Below are positions 1,262 to 52,923 of a stretch of 64,000 nucleotides of DNA, in pieces (within the stretch, counting starts at the first letter, position 1; every line of letters starts with the position of its first letter). Position numbers and translations under genes: made by a program. The stretch comes from Octopus bimaculoides (taxonomy: Eukaryota), in NCBI RefSeq assembly GCF_001194135.2, contig NC_068996.1, forward strand, positions 34,931,035 through 34,995,034, read 5' to 3'. The notes beneath the pieces are model-generated. The model was not told where the DNA came from, did no database searches, and saw nothing but the letters and a program-made list of their open reading frames with translations.

Positions 1262-1494
1262 AAGGGGTGAGCTGGTAGAATTTTTAGCATACTGAACAAA
1301 ATGCTTAGTGATGTTTCATGTCTTTATGTCCTGAGTTCAAATTATACTGAGGTCACCTTTGCCTTTTATACGTTTAGGGTGATTGAAATAAGTACCAGTT
1401 GAGTACTGGGTCAAGGAAATTGGCTGACCACCAGCTCCAAAATTTTAGGCCTTGTGCCTTGAATAGAAAGGATTATTATTATTATTATTACTAC

Positions 1495-1533
<39 letters not shown>

Positions 1534-1731
1534 GGCAGTGAACTGGCAAAATCATTAAGATACTACACAAAATGTTTCACAATTTGTCCATCTTTATATT
1601 CTAAGTTTAAATTCCATAGATGTTAACTTTGCATTTTAGGGTCAATAAAATAAGTACTAGTTGAACACTGGGGTTGATGTAATTGACTTACCCCTCCTCC
1701 AAAATTACTGGCCTTGTGCCAAAATTTGAAA

Positions 1732-1735
<4 letters not shown>
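1262..1735 (+). mobile_element. Two tandem copies of tRNA-like SINE family C with (ATT)n tails (others at about 49335-49535, 57225-57430, 62415-62630)
   Basis: GAGCTGGCAGAA..AATGCTTAG..CTGAGTTCAAATT..AAATAAGTACCAGTTGA..GGCCTTGTGCC consensus repeated. Confidence 0.8.
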
Positions 1736-1765
<30 letters not shown>

Positions 1766-2109
1766 TTTGTTTTTAAGTTCATTTTCCTATGCTAGCATGG
1801 TTTAGATGAATATATTTTATTGACGCATTATTTGTAAAGCTGGATACCCTTATCTGTTCCTTTTTCATCCTCCTTATCTTTGAAAGTGAAGAGTTACTGA
1901 ATGATCTGTTGACAGGAAAATGTCAGCAAATGTCACCATCTATTGCTGAAAAATGAGATGAGTTCAAAAAGTGGAATGTTGAAAAAATGAAAAAAAAGAA
2001 AGGTAAAAAAGAAAAAAGACGTAGAGTTATGTTCCCTTTAACCATAGAGTTATAAGTCTTGATGGTGTAGAATCAACGGAAGGGGTCTCCAGTCAGTGAT
2101 ACAGATATT

Positions 2110-2260
2110 CAATCCAAAAAGGGTGGGGTTCTCAAATTTGCCAAAAGAAACTTATCCATATGTTTGCATTTGTTGATAATCTCTGATCTGGATTTCAGCA
2201 GTGCAGTGGTATTCTTAGATCTAGAAGGATATGCTATGTTTAAGATATACATAATACCAT
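2110..2260 (-). mobile_element. Short PLE endonuclease C-terminal remnant
   Basis: LLKSRSEIINKCKHMDKFLLANL resembles the PLE C-terminal motif LLN.RSE..SKCRH.NKF. Confidence 0.45.
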
Positions 2261-3093
2261 ATATTAACGGATAATATCTTCAATGTATGAAACTAGTAGA
2301 AGCTCATAACTATATACTGTGTACATTAAATAATATTTATCTCTCACCAGTTTGAGAACTTTTTTTCTGATATTATCTTATGGAAAAGTAAGCTGTATAT
2401 ATACAAGTGTGTGTGTATGCATATATATTAAGGTGGTATGTGTGTGTGTATATATATATATTAAAATGGTACTCCAACATGGCTGCAGTCAAATGACTGA
2501 AACAAATAAAAGAATAAAATAGAATGTGTGTGTGTATGCGTGCATATATGTGTGTATGTGAGTTTGTATATCTATGTCTTGACACGATGTGATAGTTGTA
2601 GAGGATCCTAACTATTATAAAAGCAATGTCAATTCCTTCTAATCTTCTGTGAAAACATGTCTAGCCAAAGTGAAATATTATTTTGCATGAAGATAGGTAA
2701 GGGTTAGCAGTATGAAGAATATCTGGCTGTTGAAAAATCTACCTCATTGAATTCCATCTCACCTGTACAAACATGGAAAATTAAATGTTGAAACAATGAT
2801 GATGATGATGATGACAATGACACACACACACACACACACACACATGACAGGCATCCTATGCAGTTTCTATCAGTCATTAGTGAGCCTGGAACTATAGTAG
2901 AAGACATGTGGTGAAGGTGCTGAAACCTTAGCCACACAATCATACCAATACCAATCATTATTATTATTATACAGGTGTGGCTATGTGGTAAGAAGCTTGC
3001 CTGACACCTTTGGCAAGTGTCTTCTACTATAGCCTTGGGCCAACCAAAGGCTTGTGAGTGGATTTGGTAGAAAGAAACTGAAAGAAGCACATC

Positions 3094-3129
<36 letters not shown>

Positions 3130-3182
3130 GTGTGACAACAAAAGAATGAATGAGACCTCAATATTATGTAAATAGAGGAATT

Positions 3183-3912
3183 TATCTGTAATATAATATG
3201 TGACAATTATTCGATTGCCATAATAAAACTCCAAGTTTTGGATGTCGGGCCAGAAATCTGCTCCGGCATCTCGTCATTATTAAGACAAACAAAAATGCTA
3301 TGCAAATGACCGTTAAAAAAAGGGAAAAAACCTAAAGGGGAGGAAGTAAAAAACGCTCATGGAATTAGCGTATCTGCACATGTACATACATACATACACA
3401 TGCATGCATGCACACCCACACACACATGCGAGTGTGAGTGAGCATATGCATATATAGCATATGTGTATTTAGACATGTATATGAATATAATTGTGCATGT
3501 ACGGGTATGTGTACGTGTGTGTGTGTGGATATGTATATGTGTACGTTTATATATGTGCAGATATGTATTTGTATATGTGTACGTGTATATATGTGCACAT
3601 ATAGATGTGTGTGTAGGTGTGCATGTATGTGTTTCATGCCAGTATGAGTGAGCATATGCATATAGGCACATGTACATGGGTGTACATGTGCACATATGCA
3701 AATTCTACAAGCATCTATTACTTTCTCCCCTTAGGGTTTTTCCCTTTACTTAACGATCATTTACATAGTAATTTCCCTTTGTTTAATGGTCATTTTCATA
3801 GCATTTTTGTTTGTCTTAATAACTGACGAGATGCCGAAGCAGATTTCTGCCCCGACATCTGAGACTCGGGGTTTTATTATGGCAACCAAATAATTGTTAC
3901 ATATTATATTAC

Positions 3913-9745: not shown

Positions 9746-10765
9746 CACTGAACCACAAAAGAAATGCGAGACATGTATGACTGCAAAATATGTTTTAATT
9801 TCATTATGTCAGAGATAAATTTTGATAAACCTGATAAAGTCAATTTCTTCGATGCACTTTGACCTCAGTCTATAGGTCCTTGTCAAGTGTTCTGGTAGAG
9901 GGCGGATCGAGCACATCGAGATTGTAGAGTGTAATATGTTCAATACCATGTATGTCCTCCCTGGGTGTTCAAAATGGCCATACACTGAAGTGCATGAGGT
10001 GGTTCACAAAAGCCATTGGCACTTGTGCCCACACCCTTGTGCCTCCAGTTCCACATGAGTTGTCGCCCTTGGGACCACCTGGTTCAGCCGTCTCTGGATT
10101 TCATCCCGCAGGTGTTCAATTGGATTCAAATCTAGGCTGAGAGCCGGCCACGGCATGGTTCTGATGTTGTGCTGATGCAGAAAGTCTATGGTGACCTTGG
10201 CCATGTGGGAGGGAGCATTGTTCTGCTGGAACATGTGGCTATGGTGACGCACAAAGAAGGGCACGATGTGAGGCTTTAGGATCTGGTCAACATAGCAGTG
10301 CTGTGATTCCATTCCCTCTGCCTGCACCAACATTTTTGAACACATAGGACCCAGTTTTATCTAGGCCCTATTCTAGATGGTACTGACAACCAGGACACGC
10401 TGCCCTGCTCGCAATCGGCTGATAGCTTGTTCTCTTTGTGCTGCTGACAATTGGGTCATACTTGATGCATCTAAATTACAAATGCCAGGAGCATGGTTCA
10501 AGTTGATTTTTATACCCATAACCTTCACGAGATGCATGCGTATTTTGATTTTCATGACAATTGTTTGCAAATGCCACCCATGGCATTTGGCACAGCTGCA
10601 TTTTGGCATCTTGTTTCAGGGAAAGTTGAAAGGTTACCTACAATTTGGGTCTCAGCCATAAACCAGCATGTCTTGGAATATTTACACTTACATCCCTGAA
10701 ATAAATTTTCAGAACTTACCAGATAAAAATGACATTTGAAAAAATCACGTTTCTTTTGTGGTTCA

Positions 10766-14146: not shown

Positions 14147-14630
14147 TGCATGAGGGGACAACTATTTTTGAGAAATCACAAATTGCACATGAGAAATTAA
14201 GGAGGGATGTCAGGAAGGGCATTGTTGTTGCACTTCCAGATGGTAAGGGTCTTCCTATGACACTGACATGCAGTGTCTGTGCAAGACCGTACCTCAGTAA
14301 AGTTGGGCTTATGAGTCATCTTCGTAGTCATAAAGCAAGACCGATGATTGACTACCAGGCCGCTGGTGATGATGCTACACACCATACTAATCATGTCTGT
14401 CGGGCATGTGGAAGGGAGTGTGATTCAGCAGGAGGACTTAAACGACACGCAAAGGTACATGCAGCCCAATTACAACAACAGCCAGCTATTGCCAGTAAAA
14501 GTTTTGGATGCCAACTCTGTGCAAGACATTGTAGATCTTTGGCTGGGCTAAAAAGTCACATTCGATCACAGCACCGTTAAGTTAAGCTTCGTGCAATGGC
14601 CAAACTCGATAACGAGGGGGCAGCCATCAT
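14147..14630 (+). mobile_element. RTE-clade LINE 3' end encoding three C2H2 zinc fingers
   Basis: Open frame HEGTTIFEKSQIAHEKLRRDVRK..CSVCARPYLSKVGLMSHLRSH..CRACGRECDSAGGLKRHAKVH..CQLCARHCRSLAGLKSHIRSQH; 3' end GCAATGG..ACGAG..GCCATCAT shared with the RT-bearing copy at 29318-29980. Confidence 0.8.
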
Positions 14631-14749: not shown

Positions 14750-15770
14750 TATTTATTTAAAGGATAAACTTCTGGTAAGTTTTACAGATTTTTACAGCTC
14801 CAGTGATGGATTGGATCTGTAGTCTTCGAATTAGCTTTCTCCTTTCTGATTTTGAGAAGCCTAATTTTTCAAGATTGGCATTTAGGCAGTGTGTTACATA
14901 TCCCAGGGCTCCAGTAATTACAGGTATAAGTATAAACCTGAACTTGTAATCTGGATAGAGTAACTGTAGATTTCTCAATAGTTCAGCGTAGGTATTCTCT
15001 TTTTCACTGATCTTCACCTTATATTAACATCCACTGGGCAGCTGATTTCCACAACTGTGCACAGTTTCTCTTCCCTATTCCAAATCATTATTTCAGGTGT
15101 GTTGTGCTTACATTTTATTGAGGTCTTCACTGGGACATTCCACCAGTATTCCTTTTTATTATGAGTGGCTATGGCTTCTACCATACTTTGGTTTTTTATT
15201 TCTTTGTCCTCGGGATTATCCTTCCGACGGATCTCATTATACAGAGTCCTGTCTACAACATCATGTCTCATTGGTAGATAATATTGTGATGACATTTTTA
15301 GACAACTGCTTATGATGTGGGTGATATCTTCCGTGTGAACTCCACAAAGTCTGCATCGATTGTCACATTTTACTGCTTCCTGCATCGATTGTCACATTTT
15401 ACTATCCCTTCTGTGCATTAGGTATTTGGTTGATATTTCCTGTTTCTGAATTAAAAAAGTATGCCCTTCAAAGTGGGAGGTAGTAATCTGGCTATTCGTC
15501 CATGATAGACTGCTTTGATGATCGATGTTACTATCATCACGCAGTTTTCTACTAACATGTCAACGCATAGTCTTCTGCTCACTTAGGCTCATCCTTTCAT
15601 CTGATGNNNNNNNNNNAACGCATAGTCTTCTGCTCACTTAGGCTCATCCTTTCATCTGATGACATGTTGCAGTAGAATTGTGCAACTTCTTTGGGCATGT
15701 ATTCTAGGTTATCAGACAAGGAATATTGCTCAAGGAGCTGCCTTCCAAGTCTTATGTTATCAGCCTCATG
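14750..15770 (-). mobile_element. R4/Dong-clade non-LTR retrotransposon 3' part (CCHC knuckle and restriction-like endonuclease)
   Basis: SHFEGHTFLIQKQEISTKYL; CRLCGVHTEDITHIISSC; RHD; PEIMIWNREEKLCTVVEISCP; KENTYAEL; IPVITGALG. Frameshifts include a 29-bp tandem duplication at about 15350-15410. Confidence 0.9.
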
Positions 15771-23629: not shown

Positions 23630-24957
23630 ATAACATATATTATCCAAAATGTACAGTATTATATATCCATCACAGCTGATCTTACCAATCAGTTTTGCAC
23701 AAGGAATACAATGGAGTGGTAGGTAACAATCTGATTATGCAACTTTACACTTGTCAGGGTTAGTTGATATGGAAAGGAACATGACGATTGCTCTCTATTG
23801 TTGGAGATGGATTAACACAGCCAGTTTGTGGCTGCTGTGAAAAAAGTGAAGCAAAATAGGGTCAGGGGATTAGGTTAGGAGTTATGTCCCTTGGTTGGGT
23901 ATGTTGTAAGGCCGGTAAGAGTTACCTTAAAGTGTTTGTGAGGAAAGTGTGGGGGTTGGGAGAATTTTGTCTATTTTGTGAGGTGTTGCCTTGTAGGAGT
24001 GTGTGTGTACATGAATGCATTGGTGTGTGCTCTGGTCAAACTCTTAGCCCGAGAGTATTGGTGGAAGGTTGAGGCAGGGGACCTGTGGTTGCAGTCATGG
24101 TAGGGCACGCAAGTACAATAGGATGTACTTCCTTTTATGTAGGCAAGAATTGAACACTTCACTCCTGCTATTCAGGCAAATATTTGGGCATTGCTTTAAA
24201 ATTGCTCTATTCTCAGCCAGGGACAACCTGCACTTCCTGCTGCTATTGAAATATGGTTTGCATTTCTACAGGATCTTCCACTTTATGATGTACTCCATGG
24301 CACTTTCTTTCAAAGACCAAATGTGCTTTGCTAGGGTTGTGGCATTGCGCGTCACCGGGATGTTGAAGGAGGACTAGTGATTGTTAAAGTGTGTTCTGAA
24401 GGGGCCTTCTGTTGCCCCCACATACTTCCAGATGCTTGGTTGTCCATTGGGTCCTCTGATTCATATACAACTGTCTCTGTATTACAGTCGCTGTTCAACG
24501 AACAAGTTGTGTTACTTCTGCATGAGAATCCTGCCTCTGACTCAGGTGCAGGCCTACCTACTAAAATATTTTTTATACTAGGTGCAAAGCTAAAGGATAT
24601 TCTCAGGGTATGTCTATTAAATATTTTGTTGAATCTATTAGTAAGGGGCAAGCGTTTATCAACTAAACTATGGGAGATCTTACCTACTCTGGTCTTAACA
24701 TTTAAAGAGAAAGGCAGCGTGTTCCAGTGGCACTTTCTCTTGGTGGGGCTAGGGTCTGGTATGTAACTAATACTATCCTTGAAACCACTGGCAGCCAAAT
24801 CCCGGTTATAGTACAGGGTGGCAGCATCAAAGATAAGCTTGAGATTCTCCTGCTGACAGGTTTCTGAACACGATGGCTAGGTGGCAGGAACCTGTGTTAA
24901 TGTATGATAGCTTCTCATTTGGTTTCCTAAAAGGCCTATAGGCATCAGATTCTGCCT
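23630..24957 (-). mobile_element. Penelope-like element: RT C-terminus, linker, GIY-YIG endonuclease and 3' terminal repeat (degenerate)
   Basis: YRPFRKPNEKLSYINTGS; TLPFSLNVKTRVGKI..KIFNRHTLRISFS; CSLNSDCNTETVVYE; NATTLAKHIWSLKE..IKWKIL..KCRLSLAE..LNSRSEVFNSCLHKRKY; stops and frameshifts present. Confidence 0.9.
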
Positions 24958-28039: not shown

Positions 28040-28791
28040 TTATACTTAGAGAATGAGTATTTAGTAGCGTGAAGACAGACTAGGCTCTAGCCTAATCTGT
28101 TTAATAGGTCATTCTTAGCCGTTAGGATCTCGAGGCGCTCAGTTAAACAGAGTTGACAGCATCTGTTAGTTGGGTTATATGAATTAGCTACTTTTAGTAT
28201 GTGCCACTTTAGTTTATATTCTATCTTATTGTCGTTTAGTTCCCAGATATACCTACTAAGTCCTGTTGAATTTGCCTTATTTCTATTTTTAAAACTGGAT
28301 AGGTGCTCATTATATCTAAGGCGTATTTGTTTTTTTTGTCCCACCTATGTAAGATCTAGTGTGGCTGTTTGTTTGTACGTCACATTGGTAAACTATATTT
28401 TCGGTCTTGCATCTATTGGAGAAATTACATTTATTCCTATCTCTACAGCCACATAGGTTGTAAGGGGTGTCTATGTCTGTGTTTTGTTGTGTGGCCCTAT
28501 TGTTTTTTTGGTGTGCGTCCCTCCTAGTAAGGGGTGTTGGATTAGGGTTGGAGTTCATTCTATTATATGGAGGGTTGTTGGTTTGGTTGTACGTGGTGTT
28601 TCTAGCTGTATAGAATGCGTCTAATTTCTTATTAATAGATGCTATTATGGTAGCTAAGTTACATGTCAGGCTGTGGCCTATTCTTATTTTGTTCTTAAAT
28701 ATTTCTGCGTATTTATTGTTTACATTGAGGTGTTTATCTATTATGTTCATTAGTGAGCGGACTATGTTAGATTTGAGGTTCATGTTATAGG
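28040..28791 (-). mobile_element. Penelope-like element 3' part (linker and GIY-YIG endonuclease), second family
   Basis: LCGCRDRNKCNFSNRCKTENIVYQC..SYIG, then a frameshift to IRLRYNEHLSSFKNRNKANSTGLSRYIWELNDNKIEYKLKWHIL..CQLCLTERLEIL; 5' end lost in a gap. Confidence 0.9.
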
Positions 28792-31085: not shown

Positions 31086-34000
31086 ATGAATGTATATGTA
31101 TATATATGAGTGTGTCTATGTGTATGTGTGAATATATATAGAACGAAAGCTAAGTTTTATTTTTACTCTTCGTCTTATTTTATTCTAATGTCTCTCCCAT
31201 TCAGCATTTCCAGTCCCTCCCAATTTCTTATATGTTTATAAGATAATATGTAGCTTACAATAGCATGAGTTTGTCTATGTTTTTATGTTAGTATGTAGAT
31301 TAGAACAGTATGATTTCTTATGTTTCTTTTTTTATGATATTATGTGGCTTAGAGTGTATTAATAATAACAATAAAAGTTTAAATATTAATGAATGTGAAT
31401 ATAATATGATTAGGCATAAATTATCAAGAAAATTTCTTCATCCATCCTGCCCTGTGTGGGTGTGTCTATTATGTAGTTGGTTATGGTCAGTCAGAAAGTT
31501 ACCATTGGTTTCACATCTATTATTGCTCTTAGCAATATAGGTGACACATCAGACCTGCTGGTTGGTGTCAAATAACCTCTTAACTAATGGAGGTAAGAAT
31601 ACAGTCTTGGTCTACAAGGTTGTGAAAAAAGACCCTGAAACGAAATTCTCTGAAGTAAAAAGCCCTTTTAGACAAGATAAAGTTACCTTTGTATCTGAAA
31701 AGGGTCATTCACTTGTCAGCAAATTTGTATCCATTCACTTGTCAGCAAACGGAATTTCATGTCATCAACATGAATTTTCTCTCATGAGTTACCACTGAAA
31801 CATCTTACTTATGAAATTTAAGAAGGCGCCCAAGCCAAACAAAATTCTAGGATTCTTGCTCTTGGCCAAGGAAAGTAAACTGAACAGTTCAGTCTTACAT
31901 GTAGTAAGGAGATGGTCATAACAGGAACGTTATTCATCATAACGTTGATTGGCCTGGCCTGGGTCTAAACATCAACAACAACAACAACAATCAAGATATT
32001 TTTCTTTATCCTATCTTATTTTCTGACAAATCTTTTCATTGAATATTCCTGTCAGAAATTGTTTTATAAAACAATTGTTAATTTAATTGTAATCATAAAC
32101 GAAAATAAAGTTTATACTTAAAACAATAAAGTTTTGAGTTATGTCAAATAGTTTGTTAATTAAATAAATGTGATTAAATTGAGTTGTGGCACTAACTAAA
32201 GCAGATTAAATATAAAACAATATATCTGGAAACCCTTATGTTACCTTATTTCAATTAAAATGATTTTTGTTTCAATGAATTTTGAAAATAATGAAGAATT
32301 TAATAAAATGTACCTGTCATTATAAAGTTGGTGTTTGGAACATAGGTTAACATGAAATTTTGATGGGAGGTTGCAATTTAGATCATTTTAAAAAAGGGAA
32401 TTTGTATCATGGAACCAGGGAAGGTTTCAGATGGATTCTCGATATGCTTAAAATAGCAGTTAAGTTGTTCTCTCAGAATTATCCTAAGGAACGCAAGATG
32501 TATTGGACAGAAGGGCTGAGTTTTGGAATTGCTATCCTTCAAAGTTCCACACCTCGTGGAAAAGAAAAATAGTTTTATTTATTTATTTATTGTTTGTTTC
32601 AGTCATTAGAACATGGCTGTGTTGGGGTACCACCTTGAAGAGTTTAGTCAAAATCAACTGCAAAACTGATTCTATTGCCCTCTTTTACTGAACCCCTAAG
32701 TGGTGGTGGAAGACAAACACCACACAACGCGCGCGCACGCACACACAAGAAAAGAGATGACAAAAGAATAAACGATTATTTTACAGCTTATATCAGTATC
32801 CGTCAACCAAACCCACTCACAAGGTTTTGGTCAGGCCGAGGCTATAGCAGAAGAGACTTGCCCAAAGTGCCATGCAGAGGGACTAAATCTGGCATCGCGT
32901 TAAGATTCTGAAAAAAAAAAAAAATTCCCCAAATGTAACATTTTTACATTTTGGCCCCTCTTCCATACCCTTTTCTTCCCCATAATGTATAGAACTTCGA
33001 AAGGTAACCATTTCAAAACCCCGTTGGACAATATAACTTACAGTGCTTGAAATTGGATGGTCACAGCTGGAATGCAATTGATTTAATTATAGATCTATTT
33101 AATTAGAGCTGACCTAGGGTTAAATAACATCAATAAGAAGAAAATACACATTATATAATGTAGTATAGATATATTGTCTTAAAACTAAAAACGTAAGGTC
33201 ACGACGGGAACGATTTTGATCATAAATCTGTTGGATTAAGTCTGAGCAAGGGCCTAAACAGCAGAATAACTATTGTGGGGCCCACATAGTCACTGGACCT
33301 GTTAGAAATATCAACCTAGATAATGACGTGATACAGAGCCTTTAAAATGATAGTCATGGGCGTATTACAGCGAGCCAAGAGTTACTACAGTACCAACAGT
33401 AAATAATAACAGGGATCTAACATTTTCGAAGAGAAAAGAGGAATGTATTTTCGTGTTTGTTGGTTTAATTTAAAGAGGGTAAATGATATACACAAAATAT
33501 ACACATACATGTATATATACTTACACATACGCAATAACATACACATACATATACAGATAATGCATACACACATACATATATATATATATAGCCATAACTA
33601 CAGATTCCTCCCCCCACCGACTTTGGTTGATTATAACCTTTTTGTGCGTTTGTGCATCCGTAGATTTCTACTGAAGCAGCAGGCAATGAAGCTGTCACCA
33701 GAAAACTCGTTATGCTAAAAATACCAGCTAAAGATCTAAACGTTTCTAACAGAAAGACATTGAATAGAATAATTCCCCGTTTGAACTTTTTTTAATTACA
33801 TATATGTGTGTGTGTGTGTNNNNNNNNNNNNNNNNNNNNNNNNNNNNNNNNNNNNNNNNNNNNNNNNNNNNNNNNNNNNNNNNNNNNNNNNNNNNNNNNN
33901 NNNNNNNNNNNNNNNNNNNNNNNNNNNNNNNNNNNNNNNNNNNNNNNNNNNNNNNNNNNNNNNNNNNNNNNNNNNNNNNNNNNNNNNNNNNNNNNNNNNN

Positions 34001-34165
34001 NNNNNNNNNNNNNNNNNNNNNNNNNNNNNNNNNNNNNNNNNNNNNNNNNNNNNNNNNNNNNNNNNNNNNNNNNNNNNNNNNNNNNNNNNNNNNNNNNNNN
34101 NNNNNNNNNNNNNNNNNNNNNNNNNNNNNNNNNNNNNNNNNNNNNNNNNNNNNNNNNNNNNNNNN

Positions 34166-34359: not shown

Positions 34360-34365
34360 TTTATT
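34360..34365 (-). terminator. Probable polyadenylation signal of the PPEF gene
   Basis: AATAAA on the minus strand about 100 nt after the stop codon, followed by a U-rich tract (plus-strand A-runs at about 34285-34305). Confidence 0.5.
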
Positions 34366-34463: not shown

Positions 34464-36398
34464 TTACCACGTATATGCAGATATGCGAAAAGCCTCAAAA
34501 AATTCATTAATGTCAATGTTACCATCTTTATCAAAGTCCATAGTTTTCCCCATTTTAGCAATATCACTTTCTTTAAACACATGGCTGGTACATTTTTGAA
34601 GAATCATCATGCCATCCTTAAATTCTTGCATCGTAATTGCTCCAGAATTATCAACATCAAATGTTCGAAATATGGTCTCCAAGATCTCTCTGTTAGCATA
34701 CACAATGTCTGCGATTGGGTGTTGGGATGACCTTGAGAAATCCAATATCTTAAAAGTCTCTTCGTAATGCACCATGTTGTTGCTATCGACATCACAGATT
34801 TTGTGAATGATTAAACGCCATGGCAGTTTCAGCTTCAGCACTGCACTCAAACATGTGCTGAAGTCTTTGGTACTTACAGTTCCAGTTCCATCCTTATCGT
34901 ATTCACTAAGTGCCTCTTTGAGCTCTGGAAGTTTCAAACTAATCATTTGCTTTATTTTGCTGAATGCGGAAGTTTCCAACGAAATTATCTGATCTTTTAT
35001 GTTCAAATTATTTAACGCCTCTTCATTGCTGACAAACGGGATGATAGTCAATTTTTTTTCGTCACCACGGTATATTACAAAAGCGCCTTTATTGCTTCCT
35101 CGTACGTAATAGTTGGATGCAGAGAAAATGGTTAACACTTGGTTGTTGTGTGTGTACTCGTAGCCATTCACTTTACATTCGTGAGATCTTATTAGAAGTA
35201 CAAGACTGTTCTTCTCTAAGAAATTACTTGTAACATCAGGTCCAAAATATTTTCCACTTCCCCTAAATTCATTTTCAGAGCAACCCATTTGGTTTGACGG
35301 ATCACTCCAAAGAAGATTGACCAAGTATTCCCAGTTATATTTCTCATTTACCTCAAGATATGCACCTGGTTTTATGATTGAAATAAATTTTTGTCTTGGA
35401 ATTGCATTGATTTTCTTTAAATCTAACTCATCCGATATTCCTCCATGTACAACCAATATTTTATTATCGATGATTGAACCCAATGGTAGATATTTAAATG
35501 CTATACTGAACAACTTGAGAAGTCTTTTTGCGTAAATTCTAAATTTTTGAGTAATTTCTTTTATGAAACCATATCTCCTGTTTATAATAGGATCTTCATG
35601 GTTTCCTCTGTTCAAGAATACGTGATTAGGAAACACCAAAATACAGTAAAATATAATCATGCACACTTCAACACACTTGGGTCCTCTATCGACGATGTCT
35701 CCATTAAAAATATAAGGGTTTGTTGTAGAAGGAAGGTTATTTTTGTGAAATATGGTAAGCAGATCATCCAAACTTCCATGTAAGTCTCCAATAATAGTCA
35801 CCTTCTTGGTTACAGAAGTTGTTGTTATATGATACAAATTATTTCGAGATTTCAGTTTTAAAATCGTGTCCCTCAATATTTGTGAAACATATGCAGCATG
35901 GATTATTTTGCCACATCTGAAATCATCGACCAGAATCTGCAATTTATTAGATGAATAAGGTAGTGTGATCACGATGCCAACATAATTGTTTGGAATAATT
36001 TGTGGAATTTCAAGTTCTTTTAAAGAAATGTCTACATCGATGAATGAAGGACTGCTGGCGGCGGCCTTGTTGCTCAGCTTTTGTTGAATAAAATCCACTT
36101 TTGCTGTGTCTTGGAATTCTTCTATCAAAACTTTAAACATTTTACTCAACTTTAATTGATGTTGTTCACCGAAATATTCAATTTCTTGAAATACATTCCA
36201 GGCTATTTCTCTTCTGACTCTCAGCTTACTCGACCAAACACGGAACCATTTCTGAATCAACAGCGCTGCTTTCACATCTGATAGTTTCAATAGCTCCGAA
36301 TCCATTTCTTTCTCTTCCGGCTTAGTCCCACGTTTCATTTTGAAATGAGAGACAGCTGTCACCTTTCCTTCTATTAGTTTGGTACAGCAGCTGCCCAT
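34464..36398 (-). CDS. PPEF/rdgC: Serine/threonine protein phosphatase with EF-hands (PPEF / retinal degeneration C family), single-exon ORF, 644 aa
   Basis: Uninterrupted ORF. N-terminus MGSCCT (myristoylation Gly2 plus two Cys); IQ-like motif AALLIQKWFR; PPEF-typical WNVFQEIEYFGEQHQLKL; PPP motifs GDLHG, GDIVDRG, RGNHE, HGG, LLWSDP, IRSHE, TIFSASNYY; C-terminal EF-hand-like loops DKDGTGTVSTKDF, DVDSNNMVHYEET, DVDNSGAITMQEF, DFDKDGNIDINEF. Confidence 0.96.
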   Translation of the reverse strand: MGSCCTKLIEGKVTAVSHFKMKRGTKPEEKEMDSELLKLSDVKAALLIQKWFRVWSSKLRVRREIAWNVFQEIEYFGEQHQLKLSKMFKVLIEEFQDTAKVDFIQQKLSNKAAASSPSFIDVDISLKELEIPQIIPNNYVGIVITLPYSSNKLQILVDDFRCGKIIHAAYVSQILRDTILKLKSRNNLYHITTTSVTKKVTIIGDLHGSLDDLLTIFHKNNLPSTTNPYIFNGDIVDRGPKCVEVCMIIFYCILVFPNHVFLNRGNHEDPIINRRYGFIKEITQKFRIYAKRLLKLFSIAFKYLPLGSIIDNKILVVHGGISDELDLKKINAIPRQKFISIIKPGAYLEVNEKYNWEYLVNLLWSDPSNQMGCSENEFRGSGKYFGPDVTSNFLEKNSLVLLIRSHECKVNGYEYTHNNQVLTIFSASNYYVRGSNKGAFVIYRGDEKKLTIIPFVSNEEALNNLNIKDQIISLETSAFSKIKQMISLKLPELKEALSEYDKDGTGTVSTKDFSTCLSAVLKLKLPWRLIIHKICDVDSNNMVHYEETFKILDFSRSSQHPIADIVYANREILETIFRTFDVDNSGAITMQEFKDGMMILQKCTSHVFKESDIAKMGKTMDFDKDGNIDINEFFEAFRISAYTW

Positions 36399-36787
36399 AT
36401 CAAACCTTAGAATTAAATTTTAATAAAAATGTCTTGCTGTCTTTTCATAGAATGATGGCGACATTAAGTTATGTCTTCTTGAAATGTTCTTCCTTCAGCA
36501 ACATCACTTAAAGTAAAAAATGTCGTCCTTTACAATCTCTTAAAAACCTCTTCTGTCCTTGCGTGCATTTGATATGTAAACATTATATTATCAGTTTTGT
36601 TTAGGTAATATTACAGACAACAGAACACTTTCTACAACATAAATGTCATTATTATGTGAAACTACACACACACATACATGCAAACTATATATTCATATAC
36701 ATACATTCATTCATGTACATATACATACATAGATATACACACATATATGTATATATGTCTGTGTGTGTATTCATGTATATATATATT

Positions 36788-36879: not shown

Positions 36880-37229
36880 TATATATATATATACACACAC
36901 ACATATGTATATGTAAATAAAATATAATAATAATGAGGTTATTGTATAGTGCTCAGGTGCACTATGTGTGTTTGTGCACANNNNNNNNNNNNNNNNNNNN
37001 NNNNNNNNNNNNNNNNNNNNNNNNNNNNNNNNNNNNNNNNNNNNNNNNNNNNNNNNNNNNNNNNNNNNNATATAGGTACATATATGTACGTTTATGAGTG
37101 TTTATTTATCTCTATACGTATGTATATGCGTATGCATAAGTACCTGCACGTGTATATATATATATATATATATATATTGTTGAACCTGGCCATACATATA
37201 TATGTAATATATATATATATATATATATA

Positions 37230-52322: not shown

Positions 52323-52923
52323 TCAAGTAGATGAAGACTCTTCTTTAGTTGGACACGTGTTTATATCTGAATTTTCAGATGATATAGGTTTTGTTGATTC
52401 AGCAGGTGATGGCAAGTTTGCGTGTGTGGTGGTGGTGGTAGTGGTGGTGGAAGTGGCGGTGGTAGTAGTGGTGTCTGTGTTGGTTGATTGTGTAGAAGTA
52501 AATAGGTCTGTTTGATCGTCACTTGTTGTCCACGACTGAGACATACGAACTGAGTTGGATTTATATTTTGGACTATTTTGAGGAGAGATCTTATCGGTCA
52601 CCAAGAACGTATCCACTCTCCGCCTTGTTTTAAGTTCATTTGATCCGTCACAAGAAACGGACATAGATAACTGATCACCAGAGGCATCATCATAATCCCA
52701 ATGTTTTGGTGATCGACTGAATCTCTGAGTAGGATCAGGAGACCCAGATTCACTACCAGAAGGTGAACAGCTGTACATCTTTAAGATATTTTCCTGTGAC
52801 CCAGAAAGGTCACTTTGACTCATATGCCATTTCAGTTTGTCAAATTCCATCGACATGCGTTTGTTAGCCCGATTCTCTTTATTAAACTTCCTCATTAAAC
52901 TTTGGCATTTCTCATTCAATTGC
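52323..52923 (-). CDS. MTUS1/2-like: MTUS1/2-like terminal coding exon (K-QLNEKCQSLMRKFNKENRANKRMSMEFDKLKWHMS, then a Ser/Thr-rich tail, TGA)
   Basis: Poly-T + CAG acceptor at 52924-52926, phase 2; ENRANKRMSMEFDKLKWHM resembles the conserved MTUS1 C-terminal ESKVNKRLSMENEELLWKL; stop at 52323-52325. Confidence 0.9.

What the first reader, a model, noticed from the sequence alone, without database searches (positions are those of the whole stretch)
34464..36398. Intact intronless PPEF/rdgC phosphatase: probable functional retrogene
Characterised animal PPEF/rdgC genes are multi-exon, and the neighbouring MTUS-like gene has ordinary introns. This 1.9-kb ORF has none, yet it keeps all catalytic motifs, the IQ motif, EF-hands and an MGxCCT dual-acylation signal in a region where every TE ORF is decayed, which implies purifying selection. 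It appears divergent (IQ position-11 Arg>Lys, short catalytic insert, NLLWSDP, SAYTW tail). Drosophila RdgC dephosphorylates rhodopsin and cephalopods use rhabdomeric photoreceptors, so a duplicate could serve retina, skin photoreception or testis (inference). No poly-A remnant or TSD is visible, so the copy is old.
Basis: partly seen in the sequence, partly recalled or inferred. Interest (0 to 1): 0.7.

Follow-up and report, generated by a model that had tools for sequence, protein, structure and literature searches.

The report
Intronless, fast-evolving cephalopod PPEF/rdgC phosphatase gene
This octopus gene is the only detectable cephalopod version of the calcium-regulated phosphatase PPEF/RdgC; it lost all of its introns long ago, still looks functional, and evolves unusually fast in octopuses, so it is an old replacement of the original gene rather than a recent extra copy.

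Summary
The ORF is real: window 34464-36398 (minus strand), 644 aa, a complete PPEF/RdgC phosphatase (E=6e-139 to Drosophila RdgC). Its acylation signal, extended-IQ motif, catalytic residues and EF-hands are all intact. The window is Octopus bimaculoides.

The same single-exon CDS occurs in O. vulgaris, O. sinensis, a third octopodid, Argonauta, and a more distant sister clade that is probably decapodiform. Haliotis has 14 coding exons.

No second, canonical PPEF appears among cephalopod proteins in a 5.8-billion-protein search. The gene is therefore not a recent duplicate. It is the sole cephalopod PPEF, most likely an ancient retrogene that replaced its parent. In-situ intron loss cannot be excluded.

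Constraint holds, but it is weak in octopuses:
- Frame-shifting indels are purged: 23.5 expected from flanks, one in-frame seen (P~1e-9).
- No stop codon arose over 224 substitutions (P=4e-4).
- Replacements avoid conserved sites (P=3e-6).
- Overall omega within Octopodidae is 0.72-0.97: 0.35-0.40 in the conserved half and at least 1 in the variable half. Deeper comparisons give 0.13-0.19.

The protein is compacted, and its autoinhibitory lid contact is altered. This is an ordinary gene family with a modestly interesting evolutionary history. Expression and the parent's genomic absence were not tested.

The parts
34464..36398 (-). Complete single-exon CDS (644 aa plus stop) of the cephalopod PPEF/rdgC phosphatase
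   Evidence: ORF. RdgC homology at E=6e-139. Annotated as a 1935-nt single-exon gene in GCA_001194135.2.
36381..36398 (-). N-terminal MGSCCT: predicted myristoylation (Gly2, Thr6) and palmitoylation (Cys4/5) signal
   Evidence: MG[S/I]C..[S/T] is conserved in all 7 cephalopod sequences; canonical PPEFs have MGCxxS/T. The motif is experimentally validated in C. elegans, Drosophila and Leishmania (PMC11569196). The modification itself is inferred.
36111..36278 (-). Extended-IQ motif (residues 41-96): calmodulin-binding IQ core (48-58) plus the autoinhibitory lid helix
   Evidence: Mapped to RDGC residues 5-60. The CaM contacts I48, K50, W51, F52, R53 and the lid residues W67, F70, Y75, E78 are kept. 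Lid residues RDGC Tyr49->Ser85 and Asn53->Lys89 are changed in all cephalopods (PMC11962071).
35175..35804 (-). PPP-type metallophosphatase catalytic core (Pfam Metallophos, residues 199-408)
   Evidence: Pfam E=1.3e-25. Metal and catalytic residues D205, H207, D234, N266, H318, H406 and R379 are conserved in all cephalopods. The motifs are located.
34779..34934 (-). EF-like domain (residues 489-540) that docks the extended-IQ helix
   Evidence: The hydrophobic pocket residues equivalent to RDGC 446-487 are conserved or conservatively replaced.
34479..34703 (-). C-terminal EF-hand pair (residues 566-640) with canonical Ca2+ loops DVDNSGAITMQE and DFDKDGNIDINE
   Evidence: Pfam EF-hand_7 and EF-hand_1. 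Ca-ligand positions are conserved.
34360..34365 (-). AATAAA polyadenylation-signal candidate 98 nt after the stop codon
   Evidence: Present in O. bimaculoides and at the same place in O. vulgaris. Its use is inferred.
36399..36650 (-). About 250 nt of unique 5' flank (putative 5'UTR or promoter), bounded upstream by microsatellites
   Evidence: Collinear with O. vulgaris and with the third octopodid contig L008: 12.3% mismatch over 284 nt, similar to the CDS at 11.7%. No functional test was done.

Best explanation
This is the cephalopod orthologue, and apparently the only copy, of PPEF/RdgC. PPEF/RdgC is a membrane-anchored Ser/Thr phosphatase of the PPP family, switched on by Ca2+ through two sensors: calmodulin bound to an N-terminal extended-IQ helix, and a C-terminal EF-like/EF-hand tandem. 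At rest these hold the IQ helix as a lid over the catalytic site.

Its coding sequence lost all of the roughly 13 ancestral introns in one step, before octopods split from the L005/L006/P0006 clade (probably decapodiforms). The most likely route was retroposition of a processed mRNA followed by loss of the intron-bearing parent, i.e. 'retrogene replacement' or an 'orphan retrogene'.

After that the protein was compacted, with a minimal catalytic insert and no C-terminal tail. It evolved fast and changed one lid-to-catalytic-domain contact.

It is still a working gene, but in Octopodidae constraint is relaxed. The conserved core is under purifying selection, and the rest drifts or adapts.

Basis of each step:
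- Shown: identity, domain integrity, intronless CDS in seven cephalopod sequences, multi-exon structure outside cephalopods, no second cephalopod PPEF in protein databases, ORF maintenance, and the omega pattern.
- Inferred: retroposition as the mechanism, the parent's absence from the genome, the decapodiform identity of the sister clade, the acyl modifications, rhodopsin or TRP as substrates, and expression.
For: Identity:
- RdgC E=6e-139 over residues 41-640; Pfam Metallophos plus EF-hands.
- All catalytic, Ca-binding and CaM-contact residues are conserved.
- 119 of 132 columns invariant in 19 non-cephalopod PPEFs are kept, and the 13 changes are conservative.

Intronless across cephalopods:
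- Gene range equals CDS length in O. bimaculoides, O. sinensis, O. vulgaris and Argonauta hians.
- A contiguous ORF sits on the 32.7-kb genomic contig L005 and on L006 and L008.
- Haliotis has 14 coding exons over 34.5 kb and Lottia spans 11.4 kb.

Sole copy:
- No other cephalopod protein is in the top 120 hits for either the octopus or the Haliotis query, although the Haliotis list reaches down to cnidarians and vertebrates.
- All but one of the unnamed canonical-type hits have non-cephalopod nearest relatives.

Single origin:
- The cephalopod sequences are monophyletic on a long stem.
- They share W513F/Y, E564D, L634F, V640S, a 20-residue insert and a 5-8-residue tail.

Functional:
- Flanks show 7.6% mismatch and 1.21 gap openings per 100 nt. 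That predicts 23.5 indels in the CDS; one in-frame indel is seen, P=1.6e-9.
- P(no stop)=0.034 for 92 substitutions and 0.0004 for 224.
- Replacements avoid conserved columns, P=2.9e-6.
- Omega is 0.19 (Octopus-Argonauta) and 0.13 (L005-L006), with likelihood-ratio statistics against omega=1 of 157 and 235.

Mechanism: the dual Ca2+-sensor model comes from PMC11962071.
Against: - No retroposition hallmark survives: there is no poly-A tract and no target-site duplication.
- Synteny could not be tested. The Lottia neighbours (RFC, H1) leave no trace in the window, and the cephalopod flanks share only repeats. In-situ intron loss therefore remains possible.
- The parent's absence rests on annotated proteomes, not on a whole-genome tblastn.
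- NJ places the cephalopod clade outside Mollusca, and signature residues are uninformative. Orthology is argued from copy number, not from phylogeny.
- Omega of 0.97 for O. bimaculoides vs O. vulgaris cannot be distinguished from neutrality.
- There is no expression evidence.
- 'Intronless' is shown for the CDS only; UTR introns are not excluded.
- The organisms behind L005, L006 and P0006 are unnamed.
Confidence: 0.6

Rival explanations
1. In-situ complete intron loss. The ancestral multi-exon PPEF locus was converted to an intronless form by homologous recombination with a reverse-transcribed full-length mRNA. No relocation occurred and there was never a duplicate.
For: It accounts equally well for a sole, intronless orthologue shared by all sampled cephalopods. 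No poly-A or target-site duplication is present. About 250 nt of conserved unique 5' flank could be the original promoter.
Against: Simultaneous loss of all ~13 introns by gene conversion is uncommon in intron-rich animal genomes (general knowledge). The strong rate acceleration, the tail loss and the compaction are more typical of relocated retrocopies. Neither point is decisive.
Confidence: 0.22
2. One reading: a lineage-specific retrogene duplicate that coexists with an intron-containing parental PPEF and has taken on a new tissue role.
For: The CDS is intronless and divergent. Annotation could in principle have missed a parental gene. One unnamed canonical PPEF (P0013) has no identified source organism.
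Against: No second PPEF is found in three RefSeq- or GenBank-annotated Octopus proteomes or in Argonauta, with either query. The intronless gene is shared across deeply diverged cephalopods, so it is not young.
Confidence: 0.07
3. The gene is losing function in Octopus. It is an incipient pseudogene whose ORF happens still to be open.
For: Omega is 0.97 (CI 0.66-1.5) for O. bimaculoides vs O. vulgaris, and 1.06 in the catalytic domain. Against the third octopodid omega is 0.72-0.78. There are no expression data.
Against: Indels are depleted about 20-fold relative to the flanks, P=1.6e-9, and still ~1e-4 if the flank rate is halved. Against L008 there are 6 gap openings in 284 nt upstream versus 4 in-frame ones in 1916 nt of CDS. 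No stop codon arose in 224 substitutions, P=0.0004. Replacements avoid conserved sites, P=2.9e-6, and the conserved class has omega 0.35-0.40, significantly below 1. All catalytic residues are intact in every species.
Confidence: 0.04
4. An ancient divergent PPEF paralogue, older than Mollusca, that only cephalopods retained while losing the canonical gene.
For: NJ places the clade outside the other bilaterian PPEFs. Mollusc signature residues are not enriched: 2 of 8, the same as controls.
Against: No such paralogue is seen in any other phylum among 1447-3587 PPEF hits. The placement is what long-branch attraction would produce, given root-to-tip distances of 1.06-1.14 against 0.69-0.85. It would also require many independent losses.
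Confidence: 0.05

Closest known systems
Drosophila RdgC / animal PPEF1, PPEF2, C. elegans PEF-1 (PPP-family phosphatases with EF-hands)
   Same: The architecture is the same end to end: an N-terminal acylation signal, an extended-IQ calmodulin-binding and autoinhibitory helix, a PPP catalytic core with all metal ligands, an EF-like domain and a Ca2+-binding EF-hand pair. It should work by the dual Ca2+-sensor release of the IQ lid described for RDGC/CaM (PMC11962071).
   Different: - Single-exon CDS, against 14 coding exons in Haliotis.
- About 43% identity to other molluscan PPEFs, although Haliotis is 50% identical even to Nematostella.
- Minimal 20-residue catalytic insert and no C-terminal tail.
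- Palmitoylatable Cys at position 4/5 instead of 3.
- IQ position 11 is Lys or Gln instead of Arg.
- Lid residues Tyr49->Ser/Asn and Asn/Thr53->Lys/Arg, with the partner at position 311 switched from Lys/Arg to Glu.
Retrogene replacement / 'orphan' retrogenes (e.g. amphioxus SYCP1, PMC5803294; human orphan retrogenes, PMC3548309)
   Same: A single-exon gene is the only copy in a lineage whose outgroups have a multi-exon orthologue. It is retained under selection for a long time.
   Different: Retroposition itself is not demonstrated here. There is no poly-A or target-site duplication, synteny is untested, and the parent's absence is shown only at the proteome level. The event is very old and is followed by unusually strong protein divergence.
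Calcineurin (PP2B)
   Same: It is a Ca2+/calmodulin-activated PPP phosphatase with an autoinhibitory element. It is a weaker sequence match to the catalytic domain (E~1e-39).
   Different: PPEF carries its EF-hand sensor in cis and uses an N-terminal IQ lid. Calcineurin uses a separate B subunit and a C-terminal autoinhibitory domain. The octopus protein clearly belongs to the PPEF type, not the PP2B type.

Membership tests
PPEF/RdgC phosphatase family | PPP catalytic core with GDxHG, GDxVDRG, GNHE, HGG, RG and H motifs and the metal ligands | tested here: met
   GDLHG, GDIVDRG, GNHE, HGG, FRGSG and RSHEC are present. D205, H207, D234, N266, H318 and H406 align with RDGC D158, H160, D187, N219, H271 and H360. 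Pfam Metallophos E=1.3e-25.
PPEF/RdgC phosphatase family | N-terminal IQ / extended-IQ calmodulin-binding motif | tested here: met
   IQKWFRVWSSK at residues 48-58. The CaM-contact residues I, K, W, F(Y) and R are conserved. Position 11 is Lys, which is within the IQ consensus. CaM binding itself was not assayed.
PPEF/RdgC phosphatase family | C-terminal EF-like/EF-hand tandem with Ca2+-ligating loops | tested here: met
   Pfam EF-hand_1, EF-hand_6 and EF-hand_7. The loops DVDNSGAITMQE and DFDKDGNIDINE have their ligand positions conserved.
PPEF/RdgC phosphatase family | Closest similarity to bona fide RdgC/PPEF rather than to other PPPs | tested here: met
   RdgC E=6e-139 against PP5 at 1e-57 and PP1 at ~1e-42. 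All top database hits are PPEF/rdgC.
PPEF/RdgC phosphatase family | Ca2+/CaM-dependent phosphatase activity; rhodopsin or TRP dephosphorylation | not testable with these tools
   This needs a recombinant enzyme assay or genetics.
PPEF/RdgC phosphatase family | N-terminal myristoylation/palmitoylation signal (MGCxxS/T in many members) | tested here: met
   The sequence is MGSCCT. Gly2 and Ser/Thr6 are conserved in all cephalopods, and the Cys has shifted to position 4(5). The consensus and experimental support come from PMC11569196. Lipidation itself was not tested.
Processed retrogene (retrocopy) | Intronless CDS where relatives are multi-exon | tested here: met
   Single ORF of 1935 nt, against 14 coding exons in Haliotis and an 11.4-kb gene in Lottia.
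Processed retrogene (retrocopy) | Poly-A tract remnant and flanking target-site duplications | tested here: not met
   Only an A9 run 205 nt after the stop, and no direct repeats bracketing the gene. This is expected to be erased if the event is ancient, so the result is weak evidence either way.
Processed retrogene (retrocopy) | Intron-containing parental gene elsewhere in the same genome | tested here: not met
   No second cephalopod PPEF was found with either query. This was tested on protein databases only; a genome-wide tblastn was not possible.
Orphan retrogene / retrogene replacement | Sole copy in the lineage, with outgroup orthologues multi-exon | tested here: met
   with the caveat that only annotated proteomes were searched.
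Orphan retrogene / retrogene replacement | Located away from the ancestral (syntenic) position of the parent | tested here: inconclusive
   The Lottia neighbours RFC and H1 are not in the 64-kb window. Flanks of the cephalopod loci share only repeats. Flanks of +/-10 kb are too short for cephalopod gene spacing.
Orphan retrogene / retrogene replacement | Maintained by selection | tested here: met
   Indel depletion P=1.6e-9. No stops, P=4e-4. Avoidance of conserved sites, P=2.9e-6. Deep omega 0.13-0.19. Constraint is relaxed in Octopodidae.

The most novel reading that the evidence does not exclude
At or before the origin of coleoid cephalopods, PPEF/rdgC was replaced by a retrocopy. Freed from its old regulatory context, the copy was streamlined and had its autoinhibitory lid re-engineered: Tyr49->Ser/Asn and Asn53->Lys/Arg, paired with a charge reversal to Glu at the catalytic-domain partner. 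It has since been under recurrent positive selection at peripheral sites in Octopodidae (omega 1.2-1.75 in the variable half). On this reading, cephalopod rhabdomeric photoreceptors, or dermal light sensors, use a PPEF with altered Ca2+ gating.
Probability: 0.15. Interest if true: 0.55.

Novelty: new member of a known kind. Interest (0 to 1): 0.33.

Why it matters
RdgC is the rhodopsin and TRP phosphatase of fly rhabdomeric photoreceptors, and cephalopods have the most elaborate rhabdomeric eyes outside arthropods. Three things follow from this analysis.

- The cephalopod enzyme is encoded by a single exon, is the only copy, and is highly diverged. That is useful for anyone annotating phototransduction genes in cephalopods, because similarity-based orthology calls and trees can misplace it.
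- It adds a clean and very old candidate example of retrogene replacement in a lophotrochozoan.
- It points to specific residues for testing how the PPEF autoinhibitory lid tolerates change: Ser85, Lys89 and Glu357 in O. bimaculoides numbering.

This does not change how the PPEF family is understood. The gene is already annotated in RefSeq as 'PPEF2-like'.

Tried and rejected
1. Synteny tests. Six-frame pieces of the Lottia PPEF flanks (RFC, H1) against the window gave only microsatellite noise. Flanks of Argonauta, L005 and L006 against the window and against each other gave only weak multi-copy repeat hits. These tests were uninformative.

2. Naming the neighbour. ORF 52323-52919(-) has no Pfam domain. 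The last homology search returned only three unnamed relatives. 'MTUS-like' was not confirmed, and whether PPEF is nested in that gene could not be settled.

3. Naming the organisms behind P0002 and P0004-6. The cluster look-up gave no names, and a literature search for the run accessions found nothing.

4. Mollusc and lophotrochozoan signature residues, used to place the clade. Only 8 and 3 columns qualified, and cephalopods share 2 of 8, the same as leave-one-out controls. This was uninformative.

5. NJ tree. The cephalopod clade falls outside the other bilaterians. I treat this as long-branch attraction and not as evidence of paralogy.

6. Nei-Gojobori dN/dS alone (0.8) was replaced by GY94-F3x4 maximum likelihood with likelihood-ratio tests, confidence intervals and site classes.

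7. L008 as a possible transcript, and so as expression evidence. I rejected this because the contig ends in microsatellite sequence at the same place where the genomic flank becomes repetitive, as expected for a WGS assembly break.

8. Literature. No paper in the library describes an intronless or retrogene PPEF in cephalopods.

9. Structure prediction was not run. The match to a solved RdgC structure over residues 41-640 made it unnecessary.
Full report
**Observation.** The window holds an ATG-to-stop ORF at 34464..36398 on the minus strand, encoding 644 aa. Pfam finds a calcineurin-like metallophosphatase domain at residues 199-408 (E=1.3e-25) and EF-hands at 573-638. Against all PDB sequences the best match is Drosophila RdgC (8jfw/8jfy), E=6.2e-139, aligned continuously from residue 41 to 640. 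PP5 (1e-57) and PP1 (~1e-42) follow far behind. The exact protein is on record in Octopus bimaculoides assembly GCA_001194135.2, chromosome CM046616.1, as a gene whose range equals the CDS length.

**Motifs.** I aligned seven cephalopod sequences with 19 non-cephalopod PPEFs and mapped residues onto RDGC numbering.
- The octopus protein keeps all six metal and catalytic residues and the substrate Arg (R379).
- Of 132 columns invariant in non-cephalopod PPEFs, 119 are kept, and the 13 changes are conservative.
- Two points need correcting. The MG-x-C acylation signal is the ancestral PPEF MGCxxS/T motif with the Cys shifted by one (PMC11569196). The Asn of 'NLLWSDP' is a change private to O. 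bimaculoides.

**Gene structure across species.**
- O. sinensis and O. vulgaris: 643 aa, 90% identity, single-exon call.
- Argonauta hians: 632 aa, 57% identity, also a single-exon call.
- L008, a third octopodid contig at 78% identity, is collinear with the octopus locus.
- P0004 (48% identity) is a contiguous 1971-nt ORF on a 32.7-kb genomic contig. P0005 and P0006 are similar.
- Haliotis rubra PPEF spans 34.5 kb with 14 coding exons, and Lottia PPEF spans 11.4 kb.
- The seven cephalopod sequences form one clade on a long stem. They share private substitutions (W513F/Y, E564D, L634F, V640S), a constant 20-residue catalytic insert and a 5-8-residue tail, against 24-127 and 24-82 residues in named non-cephalopod PPEFs.
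- One ancient intron-loss event is the simplest reading. That the L005/L006/P0006 clade is decapodiform is an inference from its sister position and depth. The organisms could not be named.

**Duplicate or sole copy?**
- The octopus query returned no other cephalopod PPEF among its top 120 hits.
- The Haliotis query returned 120 hits of at least 708 bits, reaching cnidarians, vertebrates and arthropods at ~50% identity, and none was a cephalopod. The octopus protein scores only 546 bits, at 43% identity, against Haliotis.
- All unnamed canonical-type hits have clear non-cephalopod nearest relatives. The exception is P0013, whose best match is Lingula at 62%.
- So, as far as annotated proteomes show, this is the only cephalopod PPEF, and it is more diverged from other molluscs than cnidarian PPEFs are.
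The better description is an orphan retrogene or retrogene replacement (concepts in PMC3548309 and PMC5803294), or complete in-situ intron loss. I could not separate these two, because no retroposition scars remain and the synteny tests were uninformative.

**Selection.**
- Pairwise GY94-F3x4 likelihood gives omega=0.19 for Octopus-Argonauta and 0.13 for L005-L006. Both are far below 1 (2dlnL 157 and 235).
- Within Octopodidae, omega is 0.97 for O. bimaculoides vs O. vulgaris (CI 0.66-1.5, not different from 1). It is 0.78 and 0.72 against the third octopodid.

This is not pseudogene decay, for four reasons:
- Collinear non-coding flanks between the two Octopus species show 7.6% mismatches and 1.21 gap openings per 100 nt. 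That predicts ~23.5 indels in the CDS, where a single in-frame 3-nt indel is seen (P=1.6e-9; ~1e-4 even at half the flank rate).
- Against the third octopodid there are 6 gap openings in 284 nt upstream, versus 4 in-frame ones in 1916 nt of CDS.
- Simulated neutral substitution gives P(no stop)=0.034 for 92 changes and 0.0004 for 224.
- The 64 replacements between the two Octopus species avoid conserved columns: 1.5% of invariant, 6.5% of highly conserved and 15.1% of variable columns are replaced (P=2.9e-6).

I split sites by conservation in non-cephalopods, which is an independent criterion.

| Lineage | Omega, conserved half | Omega, variable half |
|---|---|---|
| Octopodidae | 0.35-0.40 (significantly below 1) | 1.15-1.75 (not significantly above 1) |
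| L005-L006 | 0.07 | 0.23 |

The gene is therefore maintained, but constraint in Octopodidae is about five-fold relaxed. Positive selection on the periphery is possible but unproven.

**How it most likely works.**
[quoted passage not shown] Ca2+ binding to both sensors releases the lid.
- All the elements for this mechanism are present. N-terminal myristoyl and palmitoyl anchors would place the enzyme on membranes.
- Rhodopsin and TRP as substrates in rhabdomeric photoreceptors is an inference from Drosophila. C. elegans PEF-1 shows that PPEFs also act in ciliated sensory neurons (PMC11569196).
- One cephalopod-specific feature stands out. In RDGC, lid residues Tyr49 and Asn53 hydrogen-bond Lys307 and Gln311. 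In cephalopods these lid residues are Ser/Asn and Lys/Arg/Gln. Position 311, which is Lys/Arg in other PPEFs, is Glu in all cephalopods except O. vulgaris, where it is Gly.
- This looks like a compensated or re-tuned lid contact. That interpretation is an inference.

**Limits.**
- 'Intronless' is shown for the CDS only.
- Expression, UTR structure, the genome-wide absence of a parental gene, and the position relative to ancestral synteny were not testable with the tools available.
- The neighbouring ORF at 52323-52919(-) is conserved in related species, but it has no named homologue, so 'MTUS-like' is unconfirmed.

**Verdict.** This is a real, intact and already-annotated PPEF gene. It is the ancient sole cephalopod PPEF, fast-evolving and compacted, not a recent functional duplicate. 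Interest is modest.

Noticed in passing
window 52323-52919 (-): A 198-aa Ser/Thr-rich ORF with no Pfam domain and only three unnamed relatives (88%, 72% and 69% identity). It is probably a conserved coding exon of the neighbouring gene.
   Followed up: partly
window 10004-10345 (-): A decayed Tc1/mariner-type transposase fragment (Pfam DDE_3, E=8e-6, below the gathering score).
   Followed up: partly
window 14155-14580 (+): An ORF with several C2H2 zinc fingers that abuts an assembly gap. Its origin (a transposable-element ORF or a ZNF gene fragment) is unknown.
   Followed up: no
window 33820-34165 and 36981-37069, plus 10 further N runs: There are twelve assembly gaps in the window. Two of them bracket the PPEF gene within about 300-600 nt, next to (TA)n, (CA)n and (TATG)n microsatellites. 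The gap-free O. vulgaris locus L003 confirms that the gene is complete.
   Followed up: yes
window 24352-24798 (-), 28316-28780 (-), 15014-15385 (-): Cys-rich ORF fragments that resemble the zinc-knuckle or endonuclease tails of retroelements. None has a Pfam hit.
   Followed up: no
P0013 (Logan contig, 690 aa; not in the window): A canonical-type PPEF from an unidentified lophotrochozoan. Its best named match is Lingula at 62%, followed by a chiton at 60%. Its source is unknown, so a basal cephalopod such as Nautilus cannot be excluded.
   Followed up: partly
window 36132-36143 (residues 86-89) and 35328-35330 (residue 357): Cephalopod-wide co-variation at the autoinhibitory lid interface. 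Lid Asn/Thr changes to Lys/Arg, and the catalytic-domain partner changes from Lys/Arg to Glu. O. vulgaris has since changed that Glu to Gly.
   Followed up: partly
L005 10001-10087 (ENA contig ctg82448l): The recorded 656-aa protein P0004 begins 29 codons upstream of the conserved MGICCS start. The extension is likely an artefact of prokaryote-style gene calling.
   Followed up: yes
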